Shown in pieces: positions 13,722-29,049 of a DNA stretch of 64,000 nt. The notes beneath the pieces were generated by a model that was not told the origin of the DNA, made no database searches, and was given only the letters and a program-made list of their open reading frames with translations. Source of the DNA: Asterias rubens (taxonomy: Eukaryota); NCBI RefSeq assembly GCF_902459465.1, contig NC_047062.1:17670001-17734000 (forward strand), written 5' to 3'. Each line of letters begins with the position of its first letter. The stretch's first letter is position 1. Position numbers and translations under genes: made by a program.

Positions 13722-16700
13722 ATGTCATCGAACATGTTGTCGGAGGGACACATTTCAGAGATAGGATTGGAAGACCTGTCTGATTCCGATGAAATAGATT
13801 TTGGAAAAGATGATAAAGAAATACTCGTAAGTTGATTTTATACTCAATAATTTGCCTTTTATATATTTGGTTTGCGGTAACACCATGTGTGTATCTACTT
13901 GCGGGGTAGAGTGTGTTCCAGAGAACTGTCTTGTTTTATTCTTCTACCGCTGAGTAGACTTCTAAGTTCTGAAAAGAACTGCGTATTAACTATATTACCT
14001 GGGCGGATGGTATAGAAATAGGCTGGGACTACTATACAACTTTAGTAATTCAGTCAAAGTCTGATTTTTAGATTCTATGTCTGATATTTTGCGACTTTGC
14101 AGAAGTTTCTGTATACTTTTTGTTTTGAAAAAAGAATCATCTGTCAAAATTCATCCATAGACAAAATTCTTTCAAAACAAAATCTTGTTGAACTTCAATG
14201 ACTGATTGATTGTTAAAAAAAATATTCCTAAGGTTTTTATTAGGCTCAAGCTATAGGTAATGTGATTACTTTGAAAAATAAATTTAAAGTCTTTTCATTG
14301 TTTATAGATTTTGTTGTGTTTTTTTGCCAGCTGTGCAGTTGTATGCTCAACATGGAACAAGTTGAAAGTTATTAAAAACCACTCAATCTAATTTGAAAGT
14401 GTTAAAGCACTTTCAAATTAAAATTGAGTGGTTTTTAATATCTGATGTCTACACAAAGTGTTTGATCAGCGTAAACAATTTAAACACCTTTTCATTTTCA
14501 GGTAACACACAGTGACCTGTAGACAGCCTGTCCAGGCATCTTACCCTGGAAAATGCAACAAAATCCAAAGCATAAACATAAAAAGCCCAGTGATTTGTAA
14601 CAAATACCTTAGGCAAAGACAACTGTACCTTTTGTCATGATAACAATTTGCTATTGTCCCGTGCCTTATCAAATTTCTGTTCTGTTTTGGGATGTTTTAT
14701 AAGTTCGGCAAGTCTGATTTAATTCATATCAGATTCCACAAACAGAGTGGACAGAAGATTCAGCACAATTCGGATCCAATTGACCTGACTAAATTAAGCA
14801 GATGTTGAATTGATTTCAGCACTGGGTGGCTTCACAGTTCACGCCCCCTGTATCTACCACTCAGCGTAGGCCTGGCCTGGCTAATAATCTGTGGGCTAAA
14901 CCAACATAACCTTGGGCAACATGTGGTTTTACTGTATACTAATGAAGCTGTGCGTCAATTTTGACTCATGGTTGGGCTACAGATGGTATTAGGTCTCCTG
15001 TATTTTGGAGATATGAATTCCTCGGAAACCCTTTAAATTACATTGTTACCTAGTACCCAGTACATGTTTAGATCAAGATAATGTGGTTTGTTTATTTGTA
15101 TTATAAAACAACCCAAAGTCTGACTAAATTCTCATTTACAAAGTAAAAAAAAAAAAAAAAAAAAAAGTTAGTTTCATGTTTTAGTGTGGGACCATTGTGA
15201 CGCATTGTTACAGTAAACCTGCAGCCATGCTTTTATTGGGATGCAAATTTAATGCAAATTGACCCAAAACTAAAAATTGTTTTTTCTTTAACTGAGCAAA
15301 CACATGTCCCATCCTTCAAAACGACATTTGAAAAAGTCATCATTTAGCCTATAAAGTGATTATGTTATGATGAAGTTTTCATCAATTTTTGTCACCATCG
15401 CTCAAATTTCTTCATGTATTAATAGATTCATCATTATGTATTACTATTTGTTTTTTTGCAGTTGAGTAATTCAGAAGACGGCAGTACAGTCAAATTGCAG
15501 CGTCAGATAACCTTGCTGAGTGGAGTAGCCATCAATGTTGGCACCATCATTGGCTCCGGGATTTTTGTATCCCCTAAAGGTTTGTCAAGAATGACAAAGT
15601 CTTAAACTTTCACAATTGTACCAAGTTTCAAAACAATGCTAAATGAACACTTTTTCAGCAAGCAGTAAATCACATTTCTTTTGAACTCATCTCACAATTT
15701 AAAAGAAAAATGGGTGGGAAAAAATCTTAAGCCAATGAAAATCAACTTGTGAACAACAAAAACCAAGATCTTGTTTTTGTTTTTATATATATAGTAATGT
15801 GCGAATGTGAACAATAGCTCAACAGACATTAATAAGGTCAATGAACAGAATTAAAATTAGAATCTGATTGAAGGCTTAACAGAAACATTCTGATTGGCTT
15901 ATTAAATGGTTTCCAATGCTCTGATTGGTTAATCAAATGATGTATGGTACCCAGGAAACACTCTGCTTGTTTATGTATTGAAGAAGAATGTGTTCATGCA
16001 CACAGCATTTATTTGAAGGCCTGAATCCCTTCCTAAGAAATGTTGCCAACAACAGACTGGAAGACTGTTCCATAGGGGGACGGCAGGGTGGATGAACATT
16101 AATTGCTTTGAAAATGAACTTTTCCAACAACAGCTGGTGCACTGGAATTCTTAGTAGAATTTTAGTGAATGAAACCATTGTTGTTTTTTGAGCATTGTTA
16201 ACCTATTTGCTTCCTCCATTTGTCCTCATTAACAGGTGTTCTGCTGGGTGTTAGCTCTGTGGGAATGACCCTGATAGTATGGGTACTAGCGGGTATCATC
16301 TCTCTCCTGGGTGCCCTCTGCTTCGCCGAACTAGGCACCATGTTCCCCTCGTCTGGGGGGTTCTACTTCTATCTCAGAGAGATCTACGGTGAATTTGCAG
16401 CGTTCCTGTTTTTGTGGGTGTCGCTTATTATGCAAGTGCCAGCCTCCTGTGCAGTGGTGGCGATCACATTCGGGCGTTATGCCGTGCAGCCATTTTTCCC
16501 GTCTGCGGATTGTGAACCACCGATGTTTGCCATTCAGCTGCTTGCCTTGAACTCTGTGTGTGAGTATATTGCACTGGGAATGCTAGGAGTAGAGGCTTAG
16601 AGGTAGAGTACAGGCCTTGGTGCCCTTGAAAGGGCAAGGGCACCAAGGCATTTTTTTGCTTGATAAAGGGCACCACCCTATGAGAGAAATTGTAAATTTC

Positions 16701-19700
16701 TACTGGAGCATTTCAAGGGCACCAAGGCAATGACCATGGGGCACGAAGGTAATTGTCTTTGTTGCTTCTGTGAAGTATCAAACCTGAGAGTAGCCATAGA
16801 GGTAGATGTAAGATTTATCTGAGGGTGAAGGGTGTTAGAATGCCTTACTTAAGGACACTTGCATCATGATCCCACTATTCGGACCCAAGTTAAAGATGGC
16901 ACTGAGAGATTTCATATTTACTACCTTTAAGGAGAACGAGAGGAAAACAGGAAAAGGGAAACACAAAGGGTCTCCATAGGGTTATTCTATAAAGACGGGG
17001 GTGCTCCACATGGAATTTTGTGTACAAAGTCTCTGAGAGGTTCAAAGGAGAGAACAAAAAGTTGGAAAGAACAAATGATACAAATGTAGGGAACCCAAGT
17101 GCGCCCTCGGTGTTCATATTGTTGGACCGGCTTCCTTCCCATGTCTCTACATAGAGAAAAGGTTTTTAAAATTTGAGTGTTTTTTTGAAATGGGTTAAAG
17201 AGCTCAACTGATCCCTTCCTTGTAATAACATTTTTCGACTTTATGCCAATTTTTATTGGAGCAGGTCACATATCAGGATTTAAATCCTAAATTGGACAAT
17301 TCTGGTTTCCATGTAGTGTTGTGCGGGTTCTTCAACATCTTCAGTGTACGCTTGACGACTGCCGTGCAAAACATCTTCACTGTGTTCAAGATGCTGGCAC
17401 TGACAATCATCATTGTCATGGGTGCAGTGCAGATATTCAGAGGTAAAATAAGGACAACATTTCATTTACATGGCTCGAATTATACACTGGACTGCAGGCC
17501 TGAGGCCAGTGGTTTTAGTGTCAAGGGCCAGTTTACTTATGATTGGACAGGTTCGATGGTCATGTGTATTTTCAATTGAATAAAAAATACCTCACTGTGT
17601 AATATCACGAACAAAAACAAAATATTTATGCACAAGTGTTGACTTTGACTCTGATAAACATCTTTCAATCTGATTGAGTAATGAAGTATACCTAATTTTC
17701 CAAAAGACAGATAAGAGAAATCTTCTCTTGTAACATGTCTTTCTTAAAGCTTTAAATTCAAATAAAAACATACTTGTTAACTAAACTGTGTCAGTGTCAG
17801 TACTCGGGACGTTCTCCTTTGATTCTGGTCTGGTACACAAGATTCTGGTCTGGTACACAAGATTCTGGTCTGGTACACAAGATTCTGGTCTGGTACACAA
17901 GATTCTGGTCTGGTACACAAGATTCTGGTCTGGTACACAAGATTCTGGTCTGGTACACAAGATTCTGGTCTGGTACACAAGATTCTGGTCTGGTACGCAA
18001 GATTCTGGTCTGGTACACAATATTCTGGTCTGGTACACAAGATTCTGGTCTGGTACACAAGATTCTGGTCTGGTACACAAGATTCTGGTCTGGTACGCAA
18101 GATTCTGGTCTGGTACGCAAGATTCTGGTATGGTACACAAGATTCTGGTCTGGTACACAAGTTTCTGGTCAAGTAAACATTTGTCTTGAAGATTATTGTT
18201 CTCCCAAATTTGAGCCCCGACTCAGATGGGCAACTACACAGAAATCTTCTCTGAGTCGCAAAGAATAAATGCTGTACATTTCTGGCCTGGAGTTTCATAT
18301 TCAAGATGGCATATTTCCATGTTGCAAAGTGCTCTTCCATTGGAAAATCTCAAGGTCTGTGAGCAAGTTTTGAAGGGCACAAATGCCCAAACTAAGGTGT
18401 ACTAATAGGCCTAGTCCCTGGTCTGATTAACAGCTGCTAACCTACATGTGTGGCTATTAAAGGGGAAAGTTTGTGTGTCTATTTATTGCAGGTGAAACAA
18501 CCAGTTTTGAGAATTCATTTGAAGGGACAACATACGGTGGCCTTGGAAATGCCTTATACTCCGGCCTTTTTTCATATGCTGGCTGGTAAGTTGGGGTTCC
18601 CTGAACTAAAGTTGTCTAATGTGATTATAAAAATAAAATAAAAATAACATGTAGGGCCCTCCTATAAAGAGGTTATTTCTTTATGTAAATGCATGGATGA
18701 ATGTGGTGTGAGATTTGAACTTTATTTCTTAGTTTCAGTTTGGGATTCTCCTGAAATAATCGTCGTTGGTCAGGGTTTGCCCTTACTGTTTATAGGGACA
18801 AGCAAGAAGCAAGCAGGACCCGTTACCTTGTTATGTAGTCAATCAGCTTTTCAGTAGTTCAAACTTGAAACAAGCTTGCCCACTAAGAGAGAATTTTGGG
18901 AGAGCAGCTGTAAACACTTTTTCTTCCATCGGTTTGAGAATCTGGCATACATTAATTTGAATTACTTTTTATCATTTTCTCTGATACAGGTATAACTTAA
19001 ACAACGTTGTTGAGGAACTTAAGAACCCGTACAAGTAAGTGATTGGACCGAACATCTCCCTTACTCGTCACCCTAATGGGCCAGGAATCTTATCTTGAGA
19101 GGGATAATACAGGCCATTTTGATTAGGAATTGGACAATTCAATCGGGAAATCTTGACATTTCTCAATGCGATGTGCACTTACATTGTGGCATGTTGGGCG
19201 AGCGGACAAGAAAATCTGACTCCAGCTCTGGTGTTTCTGATCAGCAGAGTGTGGGTTCGAGTCCCGGAGGTGTGTTTCATGTCATGATAGGGAGTCAATA
19301 TGGGAAACAGTAGTGGCTGCTGTGTAATTCAAGGTCTGAACCAAGAATTTCCAGCCTAGTGCTCCTTTTCCAATCATTTTAAAGCACTGAATAAAATCTA
19401 CATGGTTTCTATTGACACATGAGTCAAGTTCTCATCAGGCTTTGTCGATTTGTTTGATATCGTCCCCCCAAAACGACACAAAAATAATTAAAATTGTTGA
19501 ATTTGATTAAATCGTAACCTTTTTTTGTTTCAATTCATTTGCAGAAATCTACCCCGTGCTATTTATATTACCATGACGATAGTGACAATATTTTATGTTT
19601 TTGCCAATGTTGCCTACTTCACCGCAATGACACCTCAAGAGCTACTTGCATCCGATGCCGTCGCTGTGGTAAGCGTTTTTGTTTGAGAAAGCGATTGCAA

Positions 19701-22700
19701 TTTTACAATTATGTACTGAGCAAGTGGAGATCTTTCTTTTATAGTTAAAAATGTTTGGACATACAGATCACAAGTTGGATGCGTCCACCGTGCATGTTCT
19801 GATCAGCTGCAGAAGAAATTGCCAATACAACAGCAGTGTAGATCATTACTCCAGACTTTTGAAAATAAATAGCTATGTTATATTATAAACAGTTTTTTTG
19901 TTGTTACACACTAACCAGACTTGTAGTTGACTGAAAATGATAATTAAAGATGTTTTGGTCAACCTTTGAAAGTAACACTAAGACTAGACTTGTGGACAAG
20001 TCATTACATGTTTCTTACGGTGATAGCGTAACAGCCCTCCGGGGACTCGCACGATACTGTTGTTGTCTCAGGAGCCAGCAGTCTCACAAGAACATTACCA
20101 GTGTTGCGGGATTCGCAGAGAGTGTTGGTACGCTATCACCGTGACAAATATTTAACAACTTGCCCACAAGTCTACACTGAGATGGGAGCAAATATCCCTG
20201 GGGAGCAAATATCCCTGGGAGTATGGAAGACAAAAACTTCAAATAGCAAGATACGGGGTTGGGTAGTCAAGGACTTTAATGCAAGATTTTGCAAATTTTG
20301 TTTCAAAGTTGGGGAAGTATACTTTAACTTAAACATAAGAGGTACAGTCAAATACCTGTTCAACTGGTACCTCAAATATTATGTTAGATTCGGGTAGACT
20401 CTTAAAGCTGCACCAGTTTTCCAGTTAAGTTCTTCTCTTTTGAATTGAGGATAAGGTTTGGGTGGAGGGGAGATTTAGTTTGCAGAAATGTTTCCATCCT
20501 CTGTTATTTTATGGCTGTATTAGACATATGGCCTTAAGCTTCTCGGAATTCTTGCTTGGATCATGCCGCTTTCTGTTGCCATGTCAACCTTTGGATCCAA
20601 TAATGGGAACTTTCTTGCGTTTTCAAGGTATAAAGACAAATTCAGCATACGATTTAAAAACTCCAACATTTAAAACTCTGTTGTCCTCCCAACTTTCTCA
20701 AAATTACAATCAACAACATCACATTTGTGTTAATTATGCAAAAAAACTCATGCCCAAAATCATTTGTATGTTTGTTAGCGTAAATTAAACTACATACATG
20801 CTCGTTTGCCTCATCACTCCTAGAACTAAAATCCATCATTTGGACATTATTTCTTTGAAGAACAGTCAGCAAAAAATGATTACACATCCAACAGCACAAT
20901 TAGCACCAATAACAGGGGGAAAAATTGTCAGTTTTAGATGTGGGAGGAAAACCCCAATGGGGAAAAACCAATGTCCAGTTAGGGACTAAAAACCCGATCC
21001 ACATGGCTCCAGTCTGAGGTGGGATTCGAACCGGGGTCCACAGAGTTGAAAAACAGGGAACGAAAACCACTAACCTGATCCCTAGTTAGTGAACATTTTA
21101 AAGTGGTTCAGGGCCAGAGATTCTATGTGGCTAACTTCTTCTGTTATTTATCGGGGCCATGTTGTTAGCAATTCGGAGTAAAACTGCTGGGAATTATTGC
21201 TTGGATAATGCCGCTGTCTGTTGCCATGTCAACCTTGGGATCTAATAATGGAAGTTTCCTTGCCTTCTCAAGGTATATACACCAAGCAATTTTTTTTAAA
21301 ATAAATTTTACGCTTCTCTCAAACATCTTTTATATTTATGCAATCATATTTTTATTTAAATTTATTCATTAAGTGAAATGAATGCTTTTGGTAAGAAGAT
21401 TGGTTTTTGTTTTCAAGAAACATCAGGGCAGGAAGTATTTTGTATAAAATACCAGTCAATCAGACCATGGGGTTTGTACGGGTTGTATTGGTCTGAGATC
21501 AATAACTAAAGTATGTTGTTTCCAGCAAACGTTTTCAGAACAAAATATATACAAACTGTAGGGACAAAAACCCACCAAAACTTATTTGCAACTCAATATT
21601 GGCATTCAGTTTGAACAAAATAAGTTCAGTCTAAGTTGTTTGCTATGAAAAATTGCTGAGCGAAGTCACAAAACAAAAACAATGTTATCTTGTGCCATTG
21701 TACCAATGGTGACAAATATTTATTGGGTTGTCATTTTTTTGTATCAATTTTCAGTCATTTTACCAAAACTATTTTCCTGGCTTTTATCATGAATTTAAAA
21801 AATCAATGCAGCTATGACATTTGCAATTTTCTATAGCTTTTTTTCTTCCTCTCCTTTTAAAATTGCTTCTAATCATATTGCCTTTAAATGCTTTTTACCT
21901 TATTTTCATTCCAGCACAAGTTTGGAAACACGGCCAAAGAGATTTAAACATTTGGTCGCTAGAGTTGTTCAAGGCTACCTCACCGTTAGATGAGAAACTG
22001 AGCACTGATACTCCTTTTTAAACTGATCAGTTAATATCATTCAAATGGGTTTTTATATGAACAAAGGCAATTGTCAATTTCTTTCTAAGTGTTCTAAACA
22101 AATGTCCTTGGCTACCTAGGCAATTCCAGCCGTTTCTTTGTACATTTCAGGACCTTCTGACTAAAAATTTGCCCTTATACAAGATATGAACAAATTGAAA
22201 GCAAATTTTTTACGCCACATCATCTTGATTATTGAGGCACACTTATTAATCTTGAGGGGACAAGGTTCCAAAATAAGCAATATACAAACTTGCTGTCCAT
22301 CAATTAGAAGTTTAAATTCCTTTATTATTTTGGTGCAATAATTTAGCTATTCGGCCAGAGACTACTAGGAGTTGTTGCTTGGATTTTGCCGGTTTCTGTT
22401 GCCATGTCAACCTTTGGATCTAATAATGGGGGTTTTCTGTCTTTCTCAAGATATACATATCATGTACACATAGACAAAAGATGAAAGATTTGAAATCAAC
22501 TCATTAGATTCTCTTGAACACATTTTCTTTCATCATACTTTATTTTAGTGTAAAACTTAAAAGGTGTGTACTTTTGGTTGGAGGATTGAAAGTGAGCTAA
22601 CATTTTTAAATTACCTAAAACAAAATTATCTGGGCCGGGACTGCCTGAATTTTTGGTTTTTTGTTGTTGTCAGTATTGTCTGAAATATCTTCTATTACTA

Positions 22701-25700
22701 CTTCCGTTTGTGTTTTGAAAAACCTACTGCACGAATATTTTATAGCATCTTTACATTTTTGATTCATTTTACCCAAGGTATACATCTTGCTTTTATCATG
22801 AATTTTACGATATCAATACAGCCATTACTTTTACAATTTTCTTTCTTCAAAATTTTTCTTTTTCAAATTGCTTCTGATCATACTGCTCCTAATCTCATTT
22901 GCATTACAGCACACGTTTAGAAACACAAGACTGCTTTTCAGTTAGATAAGAAACATCTCTATTTCCTCCATTTCAACTTGCATTTCTTTGTAAACCTTTT
23001 TTATAATCAAAGTAAAGGCAACCTTCAAATGACAAATTTATTTCCAATTGTTACAGGCCGAGACTCTTGGTACTTGGTCAATAGCACTCTGCACTCTAGT
23101 TGGTTTTCAGACAACTTAAAAGTTAGTTTTGAATTGACTGTTCAAGTTTACACACTGCATTCTGAACCCTGAATGAAGTTGAATGATATTGACTGATCAG
23201 TCACTAGGAGGGCCAGGGCTTTATAACCAGGGTTACCATCATTGTATATTGACCTGCCAGATATTGTACTTACATGCTTTTATGTCCATTATGCAATCAT
23301 GCTTAAATGTTTGTTTCACTTAAAAGCCAAGCCAAAACTATTGAACATTGGAAGTAAGTTGCATTGCCAAAGCAACAATACAATGAAAGTCCAGGTAAGC
23401 ATTTATCACAATTGCCATCATCAGAGCGATCTAAAAACTGTTGCTGTTTTTTGGCTGTTTTATTCAGACATTTGGTATCAAGGTCCTTGGTGTGTTTGCA
23501 TGGTGTATGCCAGTGTTCGTTGCGATGTCGACATTTGGCTCAAATAACGGAAGCCTTCTCGGCTTATCTAGGTAATTGTTGACCAATGTAGACTATTACA
23601 CACATGCAAGGAGGTTGTTTTTCAAAATGAATCATTGATAATGATCAAGGCCAGATATAATTTGTAAGGGATAGTTGACAATAACATCAGTTTTAAAAGA
23701 ATATTGTCAAACTCGTAACATTATAAGACCAATGGTAACATATTATCTGATGGTTGAATTCAATGTTGGTACAGTACATTACAATCTGATTGTTGTACTC
23801 CTACAGTGTCCAAAGTGAAATGCCAAAAAATGTGTTGCATTATTCTAAATTTATCTTCTTTAAAAAATATTTTATATCTAAAACGTAAAAAAAACCACTA
23901 GAGATAATCTTTTGTCATTGCAGAAGTGAAATCGCAATTAAATTCTTTACATGCCAGTAAATCCATTTGTTTGCGTTTCCTACAAGAGATGACAGACTTT
24001 GCTGATGCTGTCGTGTAATTAATTTACGCAAATTTGGTCCGCCATGTATGTGTGTGTAATAGTCTATTCTATAACTGTAAACAAAGAGAACAAAGAATGC
24101 TGTAATGACAATAAACACAACAAAGGGGACCACTTTGCATCCACCACATCAGTAGCTCTTCCAGTGGTTGTAAATTTGTGTAAGTACCTGAAACCACCCA
24201 CCCAAATAAGTATTTCAATATAAAAGGTCATGCAGGCTTATACTGAAAATAGTTTTAGTTTATTCAATTTGTTAAAAGTCTTCTTTTTTTAAATCATCCT
24301 CAATTTTCCATAATGGACTGACAAATTTATAATAATATATTCATAATAATAATAAATAATAAGTTGTTCTTACATAGTGCATTTTACAATAATCTATCAA
24401 TGTGTGCTTAACATTAGTCTCTGGTCATTGGCAAGGACACAAGTGTCATCTCCGGGAGTCAAACCCTGCCTCCGATGACTCCAGACCACTAGAACTTGAA
24501 TGACACCCACTATTAAATTGAAAATGAAGGGTACTCTAAACATAATGCTCCTGAATAGCGCAGATGGGTACATGCTACCGAATAATCAAGTCAAACATGT
24601 TCAATATTAGCCTGCATGTCCATTCACATACTGGAACACTTTTCGGGTGGTTTCAAGTACGTGACGTATATTACAACAATAGGGAAAACTGATGCAAACT
24701 CGTCCGCTTTATTGTGTTTCATGTCTTATAACTTTTGATTGTAGAAATAAAATGATAACATGAATCCAAGCATTGTGATTGGGAAAAAAAATCTGAACAA
24801 AATCTAAAGAACTGACCTCTCATAATTTTACTTCTCACTCAATGTTTTTTTTTCCAACACTCTGTATGGAAGGCGACGATACTTAAATTTGAAACTCAAC
24901 AAAACCACAAAGTTCAGAACAAGAAATGGCAATTTAACTTTGATTTTTTTCACACTCATTCAGTCCATTTGTTACCATATTAAAGTCCAATTTCAGTGCA
25001 ACTCATTTTCAGCAACGAGATCATGCTTTACAACTTAACTCACTTTTTACCTTTTAAATTTTTCATTCATACTTTGCACTCCAAACACAATGCTACTGAA
25101 TATCACAGATGGGTACATGTTACTGATTATGTGATATTTAACCGCACTTTAGGAAACTTACTGCTCAATTATGTCTAGAACTAATGACGATATTAAGAGT
25201 AAAACAAGCAACAACAAATAGTTCATTGAGGTAACATTGTAATCACAACAAAAGGGGACTTATTTTAACAGGAAACTGGGTTTAAAGTGATGGTCCAGTT
25301 TAAACAAAAAAGGGGGAACACCCAAACTAAATTGAAAGCAAAACATTGAGTTCTTCAATTAAATAATTAAATTTCTCCAAAAATGAGATGCTTGGTTTAC
25401 GATCTTTATACAAATGGCTGTGGTCCATGCCTGTAGCTCCAAAGGGTGACAGTACCCACATATGACTTTGCAAATTTGGCACCAATGAACCTCCTACATT
25501 CTACTACTTGTTTAACCCAATTTCATGGCACATTCAATTGTGGCTTTCTGCACTTAGTTCATCATTATCAACCTGTGGTTTGAAAATCCACTTGTTTTAC
25601 CAACAATCATTAGTGAAGACAACTAATGCAATCAAGTATTACATTATCTTAAAGAGGTTCACTTGCAGAATTAAAAAACTAATAATTCTTAGGCATACAG

Positions 25701-28700
25701 TTTTGCTTACAATAAAGAAAGGTATGGCGTTGTGCTGAAAAATGTCAGCCGTAGTGGGTCGGAGTTCAAACTAAGGTTTAAACAATTTGTTGATGTTTTC
25801 TCAGAATTCAAAAGACCCTTATTACACCTTGCTATTGGGATTGATTCAGTATTTAACGATTAGGGTTACTGGATACTGGAATGCATCCTATTAATCAATG
25901 TGTTTTTCTTGTTGTAGAATGTTCTTCGTTGGGGCCAGAGATAGACAGCTGCCTAATGTCCTTGCTATGATTGATATCAAGAGGAAGACCCCTATGCCTT
26001 CTCTTCTCGTCGTGGTATGTCAACAAATTACATCATCCAAACCTTTCCAGTCCAATCAGATTTCTTTGTAGATTGCAGGGAACGATTTTTCGTCCAGCAA
26101 TTTTGCGTTAGACTGGAAGGTTTTGAACACACTGAATGATAATATTGAGTAGCAATCGGTGATTTATGAGCAGCAACTGAGACATTTTGCAGAGCATTTT
26201 GCTCTTCGAAGGAAATCGTTCACTGGATTGTCCATTTATGAACACAAATTTTGTAGATTTTTCAATAACACAAATTCTTTTAATAACACAAAACCCAAAT
26301 GTTTGGTCTTATATCTTGTACAGGCTATTCTTTCTTGGACACATTGTAAATGGTACAATGTCATGCAACTTGAATTGGTCTTGATGATTGAATACATTCA
26401 AGATTTACATGTCTATTCTTGGCCGAAACACGTAGAGCTGCTTAAGTAGAAAAAACTGATTCTGCTTTAGCGAAAATGAGCAGGATACCAGTCACAGATG
26501 CTACATGCGATGCGACATAGTATATTTGCTGGTAACCTTATTTTAGCAAGCATAATTTTGCTTCATGCTACTTGTTGTGCTTAAGCAGCTTTAAAAACAA
26601 ATTGAAATTCAACCTCTAGGTAAAAAGTTTTCATCAGGAACCATTATCTAATTCTCCAATTATCTTCAAATTTTGAATAACTATGTTATCTCTCTACTTC
26701 CTCAGACATTCCTGACATGTGTGTACGTGTTTGCCAAGGATGTCTACACACTCATCAACTATTTCAACTTTGTCCTGTGGACATCCAGTGGGGCTCTGTC
26801 TGCCGGACTGTTATATCTACGATGGAAGAAACCTGAAATGTCGAGACCATACAAGGTTGGTGCAGTTTCCTTCAGCAAATTGTATATTATAAATTTGTAG
26901 GATTTGAAACTTTGCATGGTGGAAATAAGATATAGAAGAGTTTGCGGTAACACCATGTAATAACAATCTCTAAATGAGTTGGGGTGGTTCTGAAAAGAAC
27001 CGTTGGATTAACTCGACGTTTCGATCAGTATGCTCTGATCGTCTTCTGGAGAATGCTGGACTCTGATGCTGCATGCTGCTTAAGTACTGAGTGGCGGATT
27101 AGCTTGGTGATGCACGAAGGCGGGAAATAGAGGCGGGAAGTGCAGCAGCATGCAGCATCAGAGTCCAGCATTCTACAGAAGACGATCAGAGCATACTGAT
27201 CGAAACGTCGAGTGAATCCAACGGTTCTTTTCAGAACCACCCCAACTCATTTAGAGATTGTTATTACATGGTGTTACCGCAAACTCTTCTATATATTATA
27301 AATTTATTATGTTTATCAAAAGACGCTCACAGGGGTATATATGTTTGGTTATGACGGCTCAACCATAAGCCTTGGGTCTGGTCAGAAAATACAGTTTTCC
27401 GCTCTGCAGATTCCACCAGAGTATTTGTCGGTTGATTTTTTTACAAGACTCGGGGAAAGTTTTCAGTGTACAGTGATTGTATAGGAAAATAACATGCATA
27501 ATGTTCTTTATCTCTGATACAATTTAACATCTTACAAATTAATGCAGTACTCGCTGCTAAAACGTAGGATTCAAACTGCCTCTGGCTACCTGGTAAAATG
27601 TGTTGGTCTAGTGGTAAGACATCTGCTCTAGAATGATTAGAAAAAGGTCCTGGGTTCAAATCCCACCTGAGTAACAGGCACCTAACTTTTTCCCAACAGG
27701 TTTACGAAGAAGGGTCCTATGAGATTGGTTTGTAACTATGTATTCTTTCCTGCTCATAGGTTTTCATTGGTCTGCCTATCTTCTTCACCATTGCATCATT
27801 TGCCCTGGTTGTCTTGGGGACAATCTCGGCTCCGTTAGACACCCTTATTGGAGTTGCCATCACCTTAACAGGAGTACCATTCTACTTCATCTTAATCAGA
27901 CCTGCTAAGATTCCGAAATTCCTCCACAAGATTGAAGGTAAGCAAGGTTGAGACTGTGATTGGAGGATAGATATTTTAGAGTTGAAATTTGGTGAAAGAT
28001 ACTGACTTGAGAATTGGGAATGATGCAGAACTGAGATTGAAGGGAAGATACCAATTTGAGATTTGATGAAAGATACTGACTTGAGAATTGGGAATGATGC
28101 AGAACTGAGATTTAAGGGAAGATACCAATTTGAGATTTGATGAAAGATACTGACTTGAGAATTGGGAATGATGCAGAACTGAGATTGAAGGGAAGATACC
28201 AATTTGAAATTTGGTGAAAGATACTGACTTGAGAATTGGGAATGATGTAGAACTGAGATTGAAGGGAAGATACCAATTTGAGATTTGATGAAAGATACAG
28301 AGCTGAGAACAAGTATTGAGTTGAGATTTAGAGAAGAAAAAAAAAACAAAAACAGAATTGAGATAAAAGATACAGAATTGAGATGAATGCAGAATTGATA
28401 TTGGAGGAAAGATAGAGAACTCACTGAGAAAGAAGGAAAGATACTGAATTGAGATTGAAGGAAAGAAACTGAGTTGTTATAAGAAGAAATATTCCGAATT
28501 GAGAATGAAAGAAAGATACTGAATTGAGAAAGAAGTAAATATACCGAAATGAGGTTGAAGGAAAAGTACAGAACTGCTTCTTGCATTCATTTTTGCCTGG
28601 AATTTTAGACAGAACTCCCTGTGTTTTGACACTTGCACATTTTTAATTAAGTTCACGTTTTAATTTCTGTAGTTGGTGTCACTCACTGGTGCCAAAAGCT

Positions 28701-28737
28701 GTTCCTAGTCACCAATGAAGAGAAGAAGAAGAAGTGA
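13722..28737 (+). CDS. SLC7-family (LAT/y+LAT/xCT/b0,+AT-type) heteromeric amino-acid transporter light chain, 509 aa
   Basis: Exons 13722-13826, 15462-15579, 16236-16559, 17317-17442, 18492-18585, 18990-19034, 19545-19668, [one of four 104-nt exons], 25918-26014, 26706-26855, 27760-27937, 28673-28737. All are GT-AG (using copy A, B or D) with consistent phases, 1530 nt in total. Motifs: TM1 [26 protein letters not shown]6 [45 protein letters not shown]. The subfamily cannot be assigned by eye. Confidence 0.96.
16610..16785 (+). mobile_element. Interspersed repeat, 'GGGCACCAAGGC' family
   Basis: Matches 5630-5760; lies in an SLC7 intron. Confidence 0.6.
17821..18170. repeat. 20-bp minisatellite (GATTCTGGTCTGGTACACAA) x about 17.5
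   Basis: Near-perfect tandem array without spacers; it explains the repetitive ORFs at 17774-18340. Confidence 0.98.
20524..20627 (+). CDS. SLC7 TM8 exon copy A ([35 protein letters not shown])
   Basis: TTAG| acceptor, AG|GTATAA donor, 104 nt, phase 0 to 2. Confidence 0.9.
20928..21076 (-). mobile_element. tRNA-derived SINE, family B
   Basis: B-box-like GGTTCGAATCCC on the - strand; similar to 33573-33733 and 48610-48760. Confidence 0.7.
21169..21272 (+). CDS. SLC7 TM8 exon copy B ([35 protein letters not shown])
   Basis: TTAG| acceptor, AG|GTATAT donor, 104 nt, phase 0 to 2. Confidence 0.9.
22347..22450 (+). pseudogene. SLC7 TM8 exon copy C ([35 protein letters not shown]), donor mutated to AT
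   Basis: Open 104-nt frame with TTAG| acceptor, but followed by ATATAC instead of GT. Confidence 0.7.
23468..23571 (+). CDS. SLC7 TM8 exon copy D ([35 protein letters not shown])
   Basis: TTCAG| acceptor, AG|GTAATT donor, 104 nt, phase 0 to 2; the most divergent copy. Confidence 0.92.
26435..26595. mobile_element. Interspersed repeat / MITE, 'GCTGCTTAAG' family
   Basis: Termini GCTGCTTAAG...CTTAAGCAGC; related copies at about 38690-38850 and 60335-60515. Confidence 0.6.
26897..27291. mobile_element. Foldback element with about 151-bp inverted arms, 14-bp TSD and hammerhead-like motifs (Penelope-like non-autonomous element)
   Basis: Arms at about 26929-27080 and 27144-27294; TATATTATAAATTT at 26883-26896 and 27292-27305; motif CAGAAGA-C-GATCAG-agcata-CTGATC-GAAAC-GTC in each arm. 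The Penelope assignment is inference. Confidence 0.7.
27595..27700 (+). mobile_element. tRNA-derived SINE fragment, family A
   Basis: A-box-like TGGTCTAGTGG and B-box-like GGTTCAAATCCC. Confidence 0.55.
27980..28300. repeat. 74-bp tandem repeat x about 4.3, decaying into GA-rich low complexity to about 28570
   Basis: GAAAGATAC recurs at 27994, 28068, 28142, 28216 and 28290. Confidence 0.95.
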
Positions 28738-29049
28738 TGATACAGTTCAAGAACCACCCGGACACAATACCACAACAAGAATATTCACCAAGGAAAAAAA
28801 CTGTAAAGCTTTTATCTTTAATTTCTGATAAAGTGGCAGTCGTAGGAAAAGAAATTCTAAATGCCTCCACCCCTGTTGGTGTGCAAACTCTGTACCAAAT
28901 AGTATATTGGGGATACTGCATAATATAAAAAACGATAGCAATCTATTTATCAGAAAGCTGTGTTTTCTTCACACAAGAATGTGATACGGCACATATTTGT
29001 TTTCTTCTTTTTAAAAATAAGTTCGGCAAGATACCAAAAGGTTTTGCAC

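What the first reader, a model, noticed from the sequence alone, without database searches (positions are those of the whole stretch)
20524..23571. The variable exon changes a substrate-pocket residue (LAT1 Ser342 / xCT Gly334 position)
Seen: the TM8 core STxGSNNG is fixed (x = F, or L in copy B), but the next positions differ: A NFLAFS, B SFLAFS, C GFLSFS, D SLLGLS. Established: in human LAT1 (SCFGSVNGSLFTSSR) TM8 residues Ser338 and Ser342 line the binding site, and xCT has Gly at the Ser342-equivalent position. By manual alignment the copies place Asn, Ser, Gly or Ser there. Inference: exon choice could retune substrate selectivity or affinity (large neutral versus cationic or cystine/glutamate), relevant for a marine invertebrate absorbing dissolved amino acids.
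Basis: partly seen in the sequence, partly recalled or inferred. Interest (0 to 1): 0.75.

Follow-up and report, generated by a model that had tools for sequence, protein, structure and literature searches.

The report
Sea-star transporter gene with swappable TM8 exons
A sea-star amino-acid transporter gene has four interchangeable copies of the exon for one membrane helix, and they differ at a residue known to shape the substrate pocket, but only one copy is seen in RNA and that residue is not the consistent difference between exon types.

Summary
The window is the Asterias rubens gene for an SLC7 LAT-type transporter (RefSeq "Y+L amino acid transporter 2-like"). Four tandem 104-nt exons (A–D) each encode transmembrane helix 8 (TM8). 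A tool alignment places Asn, Ser, Gly and Ser at the position of LAT1 Ser342 / xCT Gly334. Published work identifies this position as a pocket and selectivity hot spot.

1. All spliced RNA contigs and all RefSeq isoforms from four sea-star species use exon D only.
2. Exon C, the Gly copy, has an AT instead of a GT donor in this genome.
3. Acanthaster and Patiria keep one alternative exon plus D. Purifying selection is strong (dN/dS 0.05–0.14), so the alternative exon is real and ancient.
4. Acanthaster's alternative exon carries Ser, like D. The fixed differences between exon types lie at LAT1 positions 326, 330, 343, 345 and 346, not 342.
5. The residues that set charge selectivity in xCT (Arg135, Arg396) and y+LAT1 (Asp243) are absent. 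A switch to cationic or cystine/glutamate substrates is therefore unlikely.

The closest precedent is SLC7A2 CAT-2A/2B. The scan also noted this same stretch in a sibling first-reader note on the cassette.

The parts
13722..28740 (+). Whole gene: Asterias rubens SLC7 LAT-type light chain (RefSeq XP_033626211.1, 'Y+L amino acid transporter 2-like isoform X1', 509 aa)
   Evidence: The RefSeq protein P0494 maps at 96-100% identity on the window exons. Pfam AA_permease_2 matches. PDB hits to xCT, y+LAT and LAT1/2 have E 1e-123 to 1e-144. The AF2 model has pLDDT 86 and TM-score 0.90-0.95 to LAT1, y+LAT and Asc-1.
19545..19668 (+). Constitutive exon upstream of the cassette (TM7, ends ...DAVAV, phase 0)
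   Evidence: AG/GT splice sites and reading frame; tblastn.
20524..20627 (+). Cassette exon A (TM8). The pocket codon 20608-20610 is AAC = Asn.
   Evidence: AG/GT sites and intact frame. It is 100% identical in protein to A. amurensis exon A, with 4 synonymous and 0 non-synonymous changes. No spliced contig was seen.
21169..21272 (+). Cassette exon B (TM8, STLGSNNG). The pocket codon 21253-21255 is AGT = Ser.
   Evidence: AG/GT sites and intact frame. It is identical in A. amurensis. dN/dS against A is 0.10.
22347..22450 (+). Cassette exon C (TM8). The pocket codon 22431-22433 is GGT = Gly. The donor at 22451-22452 is AT instead of GT.
   Evidence: A. amurensis has GT at the same place. There are 2 non-synonymous and 0 synonymous changes between the two Asterias species.
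23468..23571 (+). Cassette exon D (TM8), the default exon. The pocket codon 23552-23554 is AGC = Ser (residue 341 of XP_033626211.1).
   Evidence: The spliced joint D to the next exon is present in all four RNA runs at depth 17-92. D is the only form in RefSeq isoforms of four species. It has the strongest polypyrimidine tract and donor of the four.
25918..26014 (+). Constitutive exon downstream of the cassette (its first base completes the Arg codon, then [12 protein letters not shown]...)
19950..19990 (+). Possible decayed fifth copy. An 18-nt match to the STFGS core lies 625 nt upstream of the same point in A.
   Evidence: Direct-repeat family D4. The alignment is weak and has no open frame. 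This is tentative.

Best explanation
This is an ancient cluster of mutually exclusive exons in a sea-star SLC7 LAT-type transporter gene. The duplicated exon encodes the end of extracellular loop 4 and all of TM8. TM8 is the hash-domain helix that carries the pocket and thin-gate residue equivalent to LAT1 Ser342, xCT Gly334 and GkApcT Met321.

Two exon types exist, and both predate the split between Asterias and Acanthaster/Patiria. The D type (…WCMP.F…NNGSLLGLS) has strong splice sites and acts as the default. The alternative type (…WIMP.S…NNG[N/S/G]FL[A/S]FS) has weak splice sites. In Asterias the alternative type expanded to three copies (A, B, C), and C is decaying in A. rubens.

Each exon is 104 nt. 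Only mRNAs that include exactly one copy keep the reading frame.

Shown: the copies and their frames, the alignment to the pocket position, purifying selection on the alternative exons, and D-only use in the available RNA.

Inferred: the alternative exons are spliced in somewhere not yet sampled, such as a tissue, a life stage or a condition. Swapping TM8 would change the substrate-facing stripe (position 342 in some copies, position 345 in all) and residues flanking it (330, 343, 346) in the segment that unwinds in xCT and lies next to LAT1 gate residue Phe344. The expected result is a change in affinity, kinetics or side-chain preference among neutral amino acids, not a change of charge class.
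For: The four copies share length and phase, and each gives an uninterrupted ORF when used alone. Skipping the cassette, or including two or more copies, gives premature stops.

Orthologous alternative and D exons are present in A. amurensis (4 copies), Acanthaster planci (2) and Patiria miniata (2). Between genera the exons are 77-86% identical, while the introns cannot be aligned.

dN/dS is 0.14 for Acanthaster against Patiria alternative exons, about 0.05 for Asterias A against Patiria, and 0.10 for A against B. The D clade is separate from the alternative exons with 95/87 support.

The functional role of the position comes from papers. The column entropy is 2.27 bits, next to invariant Asn and Gly.

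Fixed type differences lie at LAT1 positions 326, 330, 343, 345 and 346. TM8 is modelled as one continuous helix, residues 320-354, at pLDDT about 91. On a regular helix this places 345 on the same face as 334/338/342, which is an inference.

Alternative exons have a weak polypyrimidine tract (0.53-0.63) and GTAT/GTAC donors. D has 0.74-0.89 and GTAA, and this holds in all four species.

Precedent: SLC7A2 exons 7 and 8 are mutually exclusive and change affinity and capacity through the TM8 region.
Against: No transcript with A, B or C was found. In four RNA runs (three samples, two species labels) the only spliced joint is D to the next exon. Depth over A-C equals the intronic background. Three A. 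rubens RNA runs hold none of the sampled exon-A words.

All eight RefSeq proteins from four species use D. A profile search of 5.8 billion proteins for short fragments found none with an alternative exon.

Logan contigs drop rare variants, and the tissues of these runs are unknown, so absence is weak evidence. No isoform has been assayed, so the functional effect is entirely inferred.
Confidence: 0.6

Rival explanations
1. One reading: the residue at the LAT1 Ser342 position (Asn, Ser, Gly, Ser) is the functional switch, and exon choice retunes the transporter between substrate classes (large neutral, cationic, or cystine/glutamate).
For: The position is a proven selectivity hot spot in relatives and varies among the Asterias copies. 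Human paralogues with different specificities differ there: Ser in LAT1 and LAT2, Tyr in Asc-1, Gly in xCT, Thr in b0,+AT. Two Amphiura paralogues differ there as Lys and Asn.
Against: Acanthaster's alternative exon has Ser, the same as D, and B also has Ser. The residue therefore does not separate the exon types. The Gly copy lacks a GT donor in this genome. The charge determinants are absent and are not part of the cassette: Val for xCT Arg135, Leu for xCT Arg396, Tyr for y+LAT1 Asp243, Ala for LAT1 Gly255. The equivalence of Gly255 to b0,+AT Asp233 is from memory.
Confidence: 0.15
2. The alternative exons A-C are relics of tandem duplication that are no longer spliced. The gene makes only the D form.
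For: Only D appears in RNA contigs and in all annotations. The alternative exons have weak splice sites. Copy C has lost its donor and carries only non-synonymous changes between the two Asterias species.
Against: Unused exons would not keep an open frame, their length, their splice sites and dN/dS of 0.05-0.14 across genera whose introns no longer align. Exon A has 4 synonymous and 0 non-synonymous differences between the Asterias species. The possible fifth copy shows what real decay looks like. This rival probably holds for copy C in A. rubens only.
Confidence: 0.12
3. The alternative exons act as poison exons. Including one together with D shifts the frame, triggers nonsense-mediated decay and so sets the transporter level, with no alternative protein made.
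For: Any double inclusion gives a premature stop. The alternative exons have weak, regulatable splice sites.
Against: A poison exon needs no constraint at the amino-acid level. Here synonymous changes far outnumber non-synonymous ones and TM8 motifs are kept intact. No A+D or B+D joints were seen.
Confidence: 0.05

Closest known systems
SLC7A2 CAT-2A / CAT-2B (mutually exclusive exons 8 and 7)
   Same: It belongs to the same SLC7 family and uses two mutually exclusive homologous exons. The variable segment lies at or just after TM8. The swap changes affinity and capacity rather than substrate class, and the proposed mechanism acts through TM8 stability and its packing against TM6b and TM3 (PMC12714141; PMC5803215).
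   Different: CAT-2 belongs to the CAT subfamily (about 20% identical to LATs, with no heavy chain). Its critical residues lie in the TM8-TM9 intracellular region, not in the membrane core. The sea-star cassette replaces the whole of TM8, including the pocket residue. It has up to four copies, and its alternative use is not yet shown.
LAT1 (SLC7A5) Ser342, xCT (SLC7A11) Gly334, GkApcT Met321, AdiC Trp293: the TM8 selectivity position
   Same: The variable residue of the cassette aligns to this position without gaps. The protein shares the fold (TM-score 0.90-0.95) and 44-50% identity.
   Different: In those proteins the residue is fixed per gene and differs between paralogues. Here one gene encodes several states. 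The sea-star protein is not an orthologue of any single human light chain. Its PDB scores are similar for xCT-consensus, y+LAT, LAT2 and LAT1, and it lacks xCT Arg135/Arg396 and y+LAT1 Asp243.
Tandem-duplicated mutually exclusive exon clusters in general (for example Dscam, or human tandem exon duplication-derived substitutions, PMC8373072)
   Same: These are homologous adjacent exons of equal length and phase, kept under purifying selection, whose length is not a multiple of three so that the frame enforces exclusivity.
   Different: No docking or selector RNA pairing was found. The introns (541-2346 nt) are too long for steric exclusion. Use of the alternative exons is unproven.

Membership tests
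SLC7 LAT-type light chain of heteromeric amino-acid transporters | APC/LeuT fold with 12 TM helices and significant sequence homology to LAT1, LAT2, xCT and y+LAT | tested here: met
   Pfam AA_permease_2 matches. PDB phmmer E-values are 1e-123 to 1e-144. The AF2 model has pLDDT 86, with Foldseek TM 0.90-0.95 and rmsd 2.0-2.9 A to LAT1, y+LAT1/2, Asc-1, LAT2 and xCT.
SLC7 LAT-type light chain of heteromeric amino-acid transporters | Conserved Cys in the TM3-TM4 loop that forms the disulfide with the SLC3 heavy chain | tested here: met
   The Cys in ...PSADCEPP... aligns with the Cys of ...PT--CEPP... in the xCT construct. It is invariant (C167) in 58 homologues.
SLC7 LAT-type light chain of heteromeric amino-acid transporters | Physical association with an SLC3 heavy chain and obligatory exchange | not testable with these tools
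   This needs co-expression and transport assays.
Mutually exclusive exon cluster from tandem exon duplication | Adjacent homologous exons of the same length and phase, each flanked by usable splice sites | tested here: met
   All four are 104 nt with the same phase. A, B and D have AG/GT sites. C fails on its donor (AT) in A. rubens but has GT in A. amurensis.
Mutually exclusive exon cluster from tandem exon duplication | Mature mRNAs contain exactly one of the exons, and more than one of them is used | tested here: inconclusive
   Only D is seen spliced. The frame analysis shows that only single inclusion is productive. Use of A, B or C was not observed.
Mutually exclusive exon cluster from tandem exon duplication | Each alternative exon is kept by purifying selection at the protein level | tested here: met
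   dN/dS is 0.05-0.14 between genera and 0.10 for A against B. Exon A shows 4 synonymous and 0 non-synonymous changes between Asterias species. The exons are conserved islands in introns that cannot be aligned. C is the exception.
System xc- (xCT-like cystine/glutamate exchanger), as suggested for the Gly copy | Arg135 (TM3) and Arg396 (TM10) clamp for the distal carboxylate | tested here: not met
   The sea-star protein has Val142 aligned to index 135 of the xCT construct, and Leu before the conserved Trp where xCT has Arg396. The roles of these residues come from PMC8654953.
y+LAT-type (cationic/neutral exchanger), as the RefSeq name suggests | Asp243 (y+LAT1) in TM6, needed for cation selectivity and Na+ coupling | tested here: not met
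   The sea-star motif GWYNLN has Tyr where y+LAT2 has Asp in GWDTLN. The role of Asp243 comes from PMC11922002.

The most novel reading that the evidence does not exclude
Sea stars have kept, since before the Asterias/Acanthaster/Patiria split, a regulated switch that swaps the whole of TM8 in one LAT-type transporter. Asterias expanded it to three or four variants differing at the family's selectivity hot spot. One gene would then yield transporters with distinct neutral amino-acid preferences or kinetics in different tissues or life stages. This would be a natural cassette mutagenesis of the SLC7 pocket, and it is missing from all current annotations.
Probability: 0.3. Interest if true: 0.65.

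Novelty: new variant of a known kind. Interest (0 to 1): 0.5.

Why it matters
TM8 position 342 (LAT1 numbering) is one of the few residues shown to set substrate size and selectivity across the APC superfamily. If the alternative exons are used, the sea-star gene offers a set of natural TM8 variants in an otherwise identical protein. They could be used to test how TM8 rigidity (Gly at 345 in D, aromatic residues in the alternative type) and the 342 side chain shape affinity and gating in LAT-type exchangers.

It would also be the first mutually exclusive exon switch I know of in the LAT (heavy-chain-linked) branch of SLC7, parallel to CAT-2A/2B. The alternative exons are absent from the RefSeq protein isoforms retrieved for four sea-star species. 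For annotation this means conserved coding exons can be missed when the default exon dominates the RNA-seq data.

Tried and rejected
1. A direct PDB search with one 34-aa exon found nothing. It was replaced by alignment through homologue P0031 and the gene's own protein.
2. The first profile search for orthologues (A1) was swamped by vertebrate Asc-1/LAT2 and fused Trichinella proteins. A second profile with sea-star templates (A6) found the gene's own protein and its orthologues.
3. A junction-region profile (A4) looked for short transcript-derived protein fragments carrying A, B or C. None resembled any sea-star exon.
4. A search for docking/selector RNA pairings or other conserved intronic elements found only scattered short inverted repeats and no intronic conservation between genera. 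Rfam found nothing in the cassette.
5. A contig in run X3 seemed to join exon B to the intron after C. This is best explained as an assembly chimera, because B and C of A. amurensis share a 35-nt identical run, longer than the 31-mer word. It is not a structural variant.
6. I checked whether the cassette is a family-wide feature. The closest Acanthaster paralogue and an Amphiura relative each have a single TM8 exon.
7. A second run search with exon A plus 30-nt flanks could not separate spliced from unspliced use.
Only the D isoform was folded.
Full report
WHAT IS THERE. The + strand of the window carries a gene with at least 13 coding exons, from about 13722 to 28740. I rebuilt it from splice sites and homologue alignments. 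The model was then confirmed exon by exon by a RefSeq protein found later: Asterias rubens XP_033626211.1, "Y+L amino acid transporter 2-like isoform X1", 509 aa (P0494). The window is therefore A. rubens DNA.

The protein is an SLC7 LAT-type light chain.
- Pfam AA_permease_2 matches.
- Solved xCT, y+LAT1/2, LAT2, LAT1, Asc-1 and b0,+AT chains match at E 1e-116 to 1e-144.
- An AlphaFold2 model has mean pLDDT 86 and pTM 0.84. It superposes on these structures at TM-score 0.90-0.95 and rmsd 2.0-2.9 Å.
- The cysteine that links light chains to the SLC3 heavy chain is conserved.

THE OBSERVATION. Four homologous exons lie between the exon ending ...DAVAV (19545-19668) and the exon beginning (R)[12 protein letters not shown] (25918-26014). 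They are A 20524-20627, B 21169-21272, C 22347-22450 and D 23468-23571.
- Each is 104 nt and in the same phase.
- Each gives an uninterrupted reading frame when used alone.
The core is STFGSNNG (STLGSNNG in B), followed by NFLAFS, SFLAFS, GFLSFS and SLLGLS.

THE ALIGNMENT TO THE POCKET POSITION. A homologue (P0031) aligns without gaps to the four exons and to LAT1 chains. In chain 6jmq_A the indices equal the native numbering. Its L260-N261-F262 follow the published N258, and C335 and S334 fall where papers place them. Counting along that alignment, the residue after the NG motif is Ser342.

The gene's own protein aligns in the same way, and its D-exon residue is Ser341. A natural xCT sequence has Gly at residue 334 in ...SMNGGVF... 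LAT2 has Ser333, Asc-1 has Tyr333 and b0,+AT has Thr.

WHAT IS KNOWN ABOUT THAT POSITION.
- A review equates LAT1 Ser342 with AdiC Trp293. It notes that SteT K295C and GkApcT M321S, at the same position, broaden selectivity (PMC8399266).
- LAT1 S342G lowers activity (PMC5983779).
- In GkApcT, Met321 is part of the thin intracellular gate. M321S moves the Arg IC50 from 6 mM to 11.4 µM (PMC5803215).
- In xCT, Gly334 lies directly opposite the ligand, and TM8 unwinds between 334 and 337. The Thr of b0,+AT at this position is proposed to affect its substrate range (PMC8654953).
- In my alignment of 58 LAT-type proteins, this column has 2.27 bits of entropy. The residues just before it are invariant (Asn) or nearly so (Gly).

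That condition is not met.

ARE THE ALTERNATIVE EXONS USED? Not in anything I could see.
- Contigs of four RNA runs (three samples, two species labels) show one splice joint in this stretch. It runs from the end of D to 25918 at depth 17-92, equal to the depth of the next exon. A, B and C are covered only at the intronic background of 0-7, by contigs that run straight through the exon borders.
- Three A. rubens RNA runs hold none of the sampled words of exon A.
- All eight RefSeq proteins of this gene use the D-type exon. They cover A. rubens X1-X3, A. amurensis X1-X2, Patiria miniata X1-X2 and Acanthaster planci. The isoforms differ only in the first exon.
- A profile search for short protein fragments with an alternative exon found none.

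These are presence-only data. Logan contigs drop rare variants, so the absence is weak evidence.

ARE THEY NEVERTHELESS REAL EXONS? Yes, for the alternative type as a whole.
- I fetched the orthologous loci.
- A. amurensis has all four copies. A, B and D are identical in protein to A. rubens, and C differs at two residues.
- Acanthaster and Patiria each have two copies. One is a D-type exon. The other is an alternative-type exon...[14 protein letters not shown] in Acanthaster and ...[14 protein letters not shown] in Patiria.
- Between genera the introns cannot be aligned, while the alternative exon is 85% identical between Acanthaster and Patiria. That matches the neighbouring constitutive exons, at 82-86%.
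- dN/dS is 0.14 for that pair. It is about 0.05 for Asterias A against Patiria and 0.10 for A against B within the window.
- Exon A differs between the two Asterias species at four sites, all synonymous.
- A tree separates the D clade from the alternative exons with 95/87 support and joins B with C.

The D/alternative duplication therefore predates the split of these sea-star orders. From my own knowledge that is on the order of 200 million years. Both exon types have been kept as coding sequence since. Relics and poison exons would not show this pattern.

Copy C is the exception. In A. rubens its donor is AT, while A. amurensis has GT at the same base. Its two differences between the species are both non-synonymous. 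The Gly state is thus the least likely to be expressed in this genome.

HOW EXCLUSIVITY WOULD WORK. Skipping the cassette gives a stop 8 codons later. Every combination of two, three or four copies also gives an early stop. Only single inclusion is productive.

D has a strong polypyrimidine tract (0.74-0.89), a CAG acceptor and a GTAA donor in all four species. The alternative exons have weak tracts (0.53-0.63) and GTAT/GTAC donors. This is the usual picture of a default exon plus regulated alternatives. I found no competing RNA pairings and no Rfam match.

WHAT THE SWAP WOULD CHANGE. Comparing eight alternative-type with four D-type exons gives these fixed differences, in LAT1 numbering:
- 326: Ile against Cys
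- 330: Ser against Phe
- 343: Phe against Leu
- 345: Ala/Ser against Gly
- 346: Phe against Leu

Position 342 is not fixed. It is Asn, Ser or Gly in alternative exons and Ser in D. Acanthaster's alternative exon and Asterias B carry the same Ser as D.

TM8 is modelled as one continuous helix at high confidence. On a regular helix, 345 lies on the same face as 334, 338 and 342, while 330 and 346 flank that face. This is an inference from helical periodicity.

Positions 343-346 overlap the segment that unwinds in xCT (334-337). They also flank LAT1 Phe344, which is part of the intracellular hydrophobic gate (PMC7988154). Gly at 345 is found only in this gene's D exon among 58 homologues.

My reading is that the exon types differ in the substrate-facing stripe, in gate packing and in TM8 flexibility as a package. 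Residue 342 adds variation among the Asterias copies.

WHAT IT WOULD NOT CHANGE. Published work assigns charge selectivity in relatives to residues outside TM8: xCT Arg135 and Arg396 and y+LAT1 Asp243. The sea-star protein has Val, Leu and Tyr at these places, and all three are encoded by constitutive exons. A switch to cationic or cystine/glutamate substrates is therefore unlikely, whatever the TM8 exon. The RefSeq name "Y+L ... like" should not be read as a functional assignment.

COMPARISON WITH WHAT IS KNOWN. The nearest precedent is SLC7A2. Its exons 7 and 8 are mutually exclusive and give CAT-2B and CAT-2A, which differ in affinity and capacity (PMC12714141). The effect is traced to the end of TM8 and the following loop, and is thought to act through TM8 stability (PMC5803215).

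The sea-star case is the same kind of device in the LAT branch of the family. It replaces the membrane core of TM8, including the pocket residue, and has up to four copies. I found no paper describing it. It is absent from the retrieved RefSeq protein isoforms of four species. The closest paralogue in Acanthaster and a brittle-star relative each have a single TM8 exon.

VERDICT. The functional inference is only partly supported. The alternative exons are genuine, ancient and constrained, but their use is unobserved. The Gly copy is crippled in this genome. Residue 342 is not the conserved discriminator, and a change of substrate charge class is unlikely.

I rate this as a new variant of a known kind and of moderate interest. 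It would rise if alternative-exon transcripts are found.

Noticed in passing
window 22451-22452; L002 17948-17949: The donor of exon C is AT in the A. rubens window but GT in A. amurensis. This is a species- or allele-specific loss of a splice site in an otherwise intact exon. Whether it is fixed in A. rubens is unknown.
   Followed up: partly
window 19950-19990: A possible decayed fifth copy of the TM8 exon lies upstream of A. It is an 18-nt match to the STFGS core at a spacing like the A-B spacing, and it has no open frame.
   Followed up: partly
window 20882-21075: A stretch in the intron between A and B has 100-fold higher contig depth (390-985) in all four RNA runs, with many loose ends. 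It is probably a highly repeated, transcribed interspersed element. There is no Rfam match.
   Followed up: partly
window 17774-18340: The intron between the TM5 and TM6 exons holds a tandem array of about 60-nt units that reads open in several frames on both strands. It looks like a minisatellite, not a gene.
   Followed up: no
proteins P0433/P0469 (A. rubens), P0426/P0447 (Acanthaster), P0436/P0482 (Patiria), P0422/P0445/P0480 (Amphiura): A paralogous echinoderm 'Y+L amino acid transporter 2-like' gene has annotated isoforms that differ by substitutions across the first 170-240 residues (up to about residue 190 in the sea stars; TM1 to about TM4). This suggests alternative duplicated 5' exon blocks. 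Exon-duplication-based isoforms may be common in echinoderm SLC7 genes.
   Followed up: partly
proteins P0472 and P0500 (Amphiura filiformis, same chromosome): Two closely related brittle-star paralogues (over 90% identical) carry Lys and Asn at the LAT1 Ser342 position. This is another case of variation at this hot spot.
   Followed up: no
window 13722-13826 and about 15462: RefSeq isoforms X1 and X2 of this gene differ only in the first coding exon (two alternative N-termini). The X1 first exon is in the window at 13722-13826. The X2 first exon was not located.
   Followed up: partly
L002 16538-16641 and 17844-17947: In A. amurensis, exons B and C share a 35-nt identical run, and both read STLGSNNG. 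This is consistent with gene conversion between B and C. It also explains a chimeric B/C contig in RNA run X3.
   Followed up: partly
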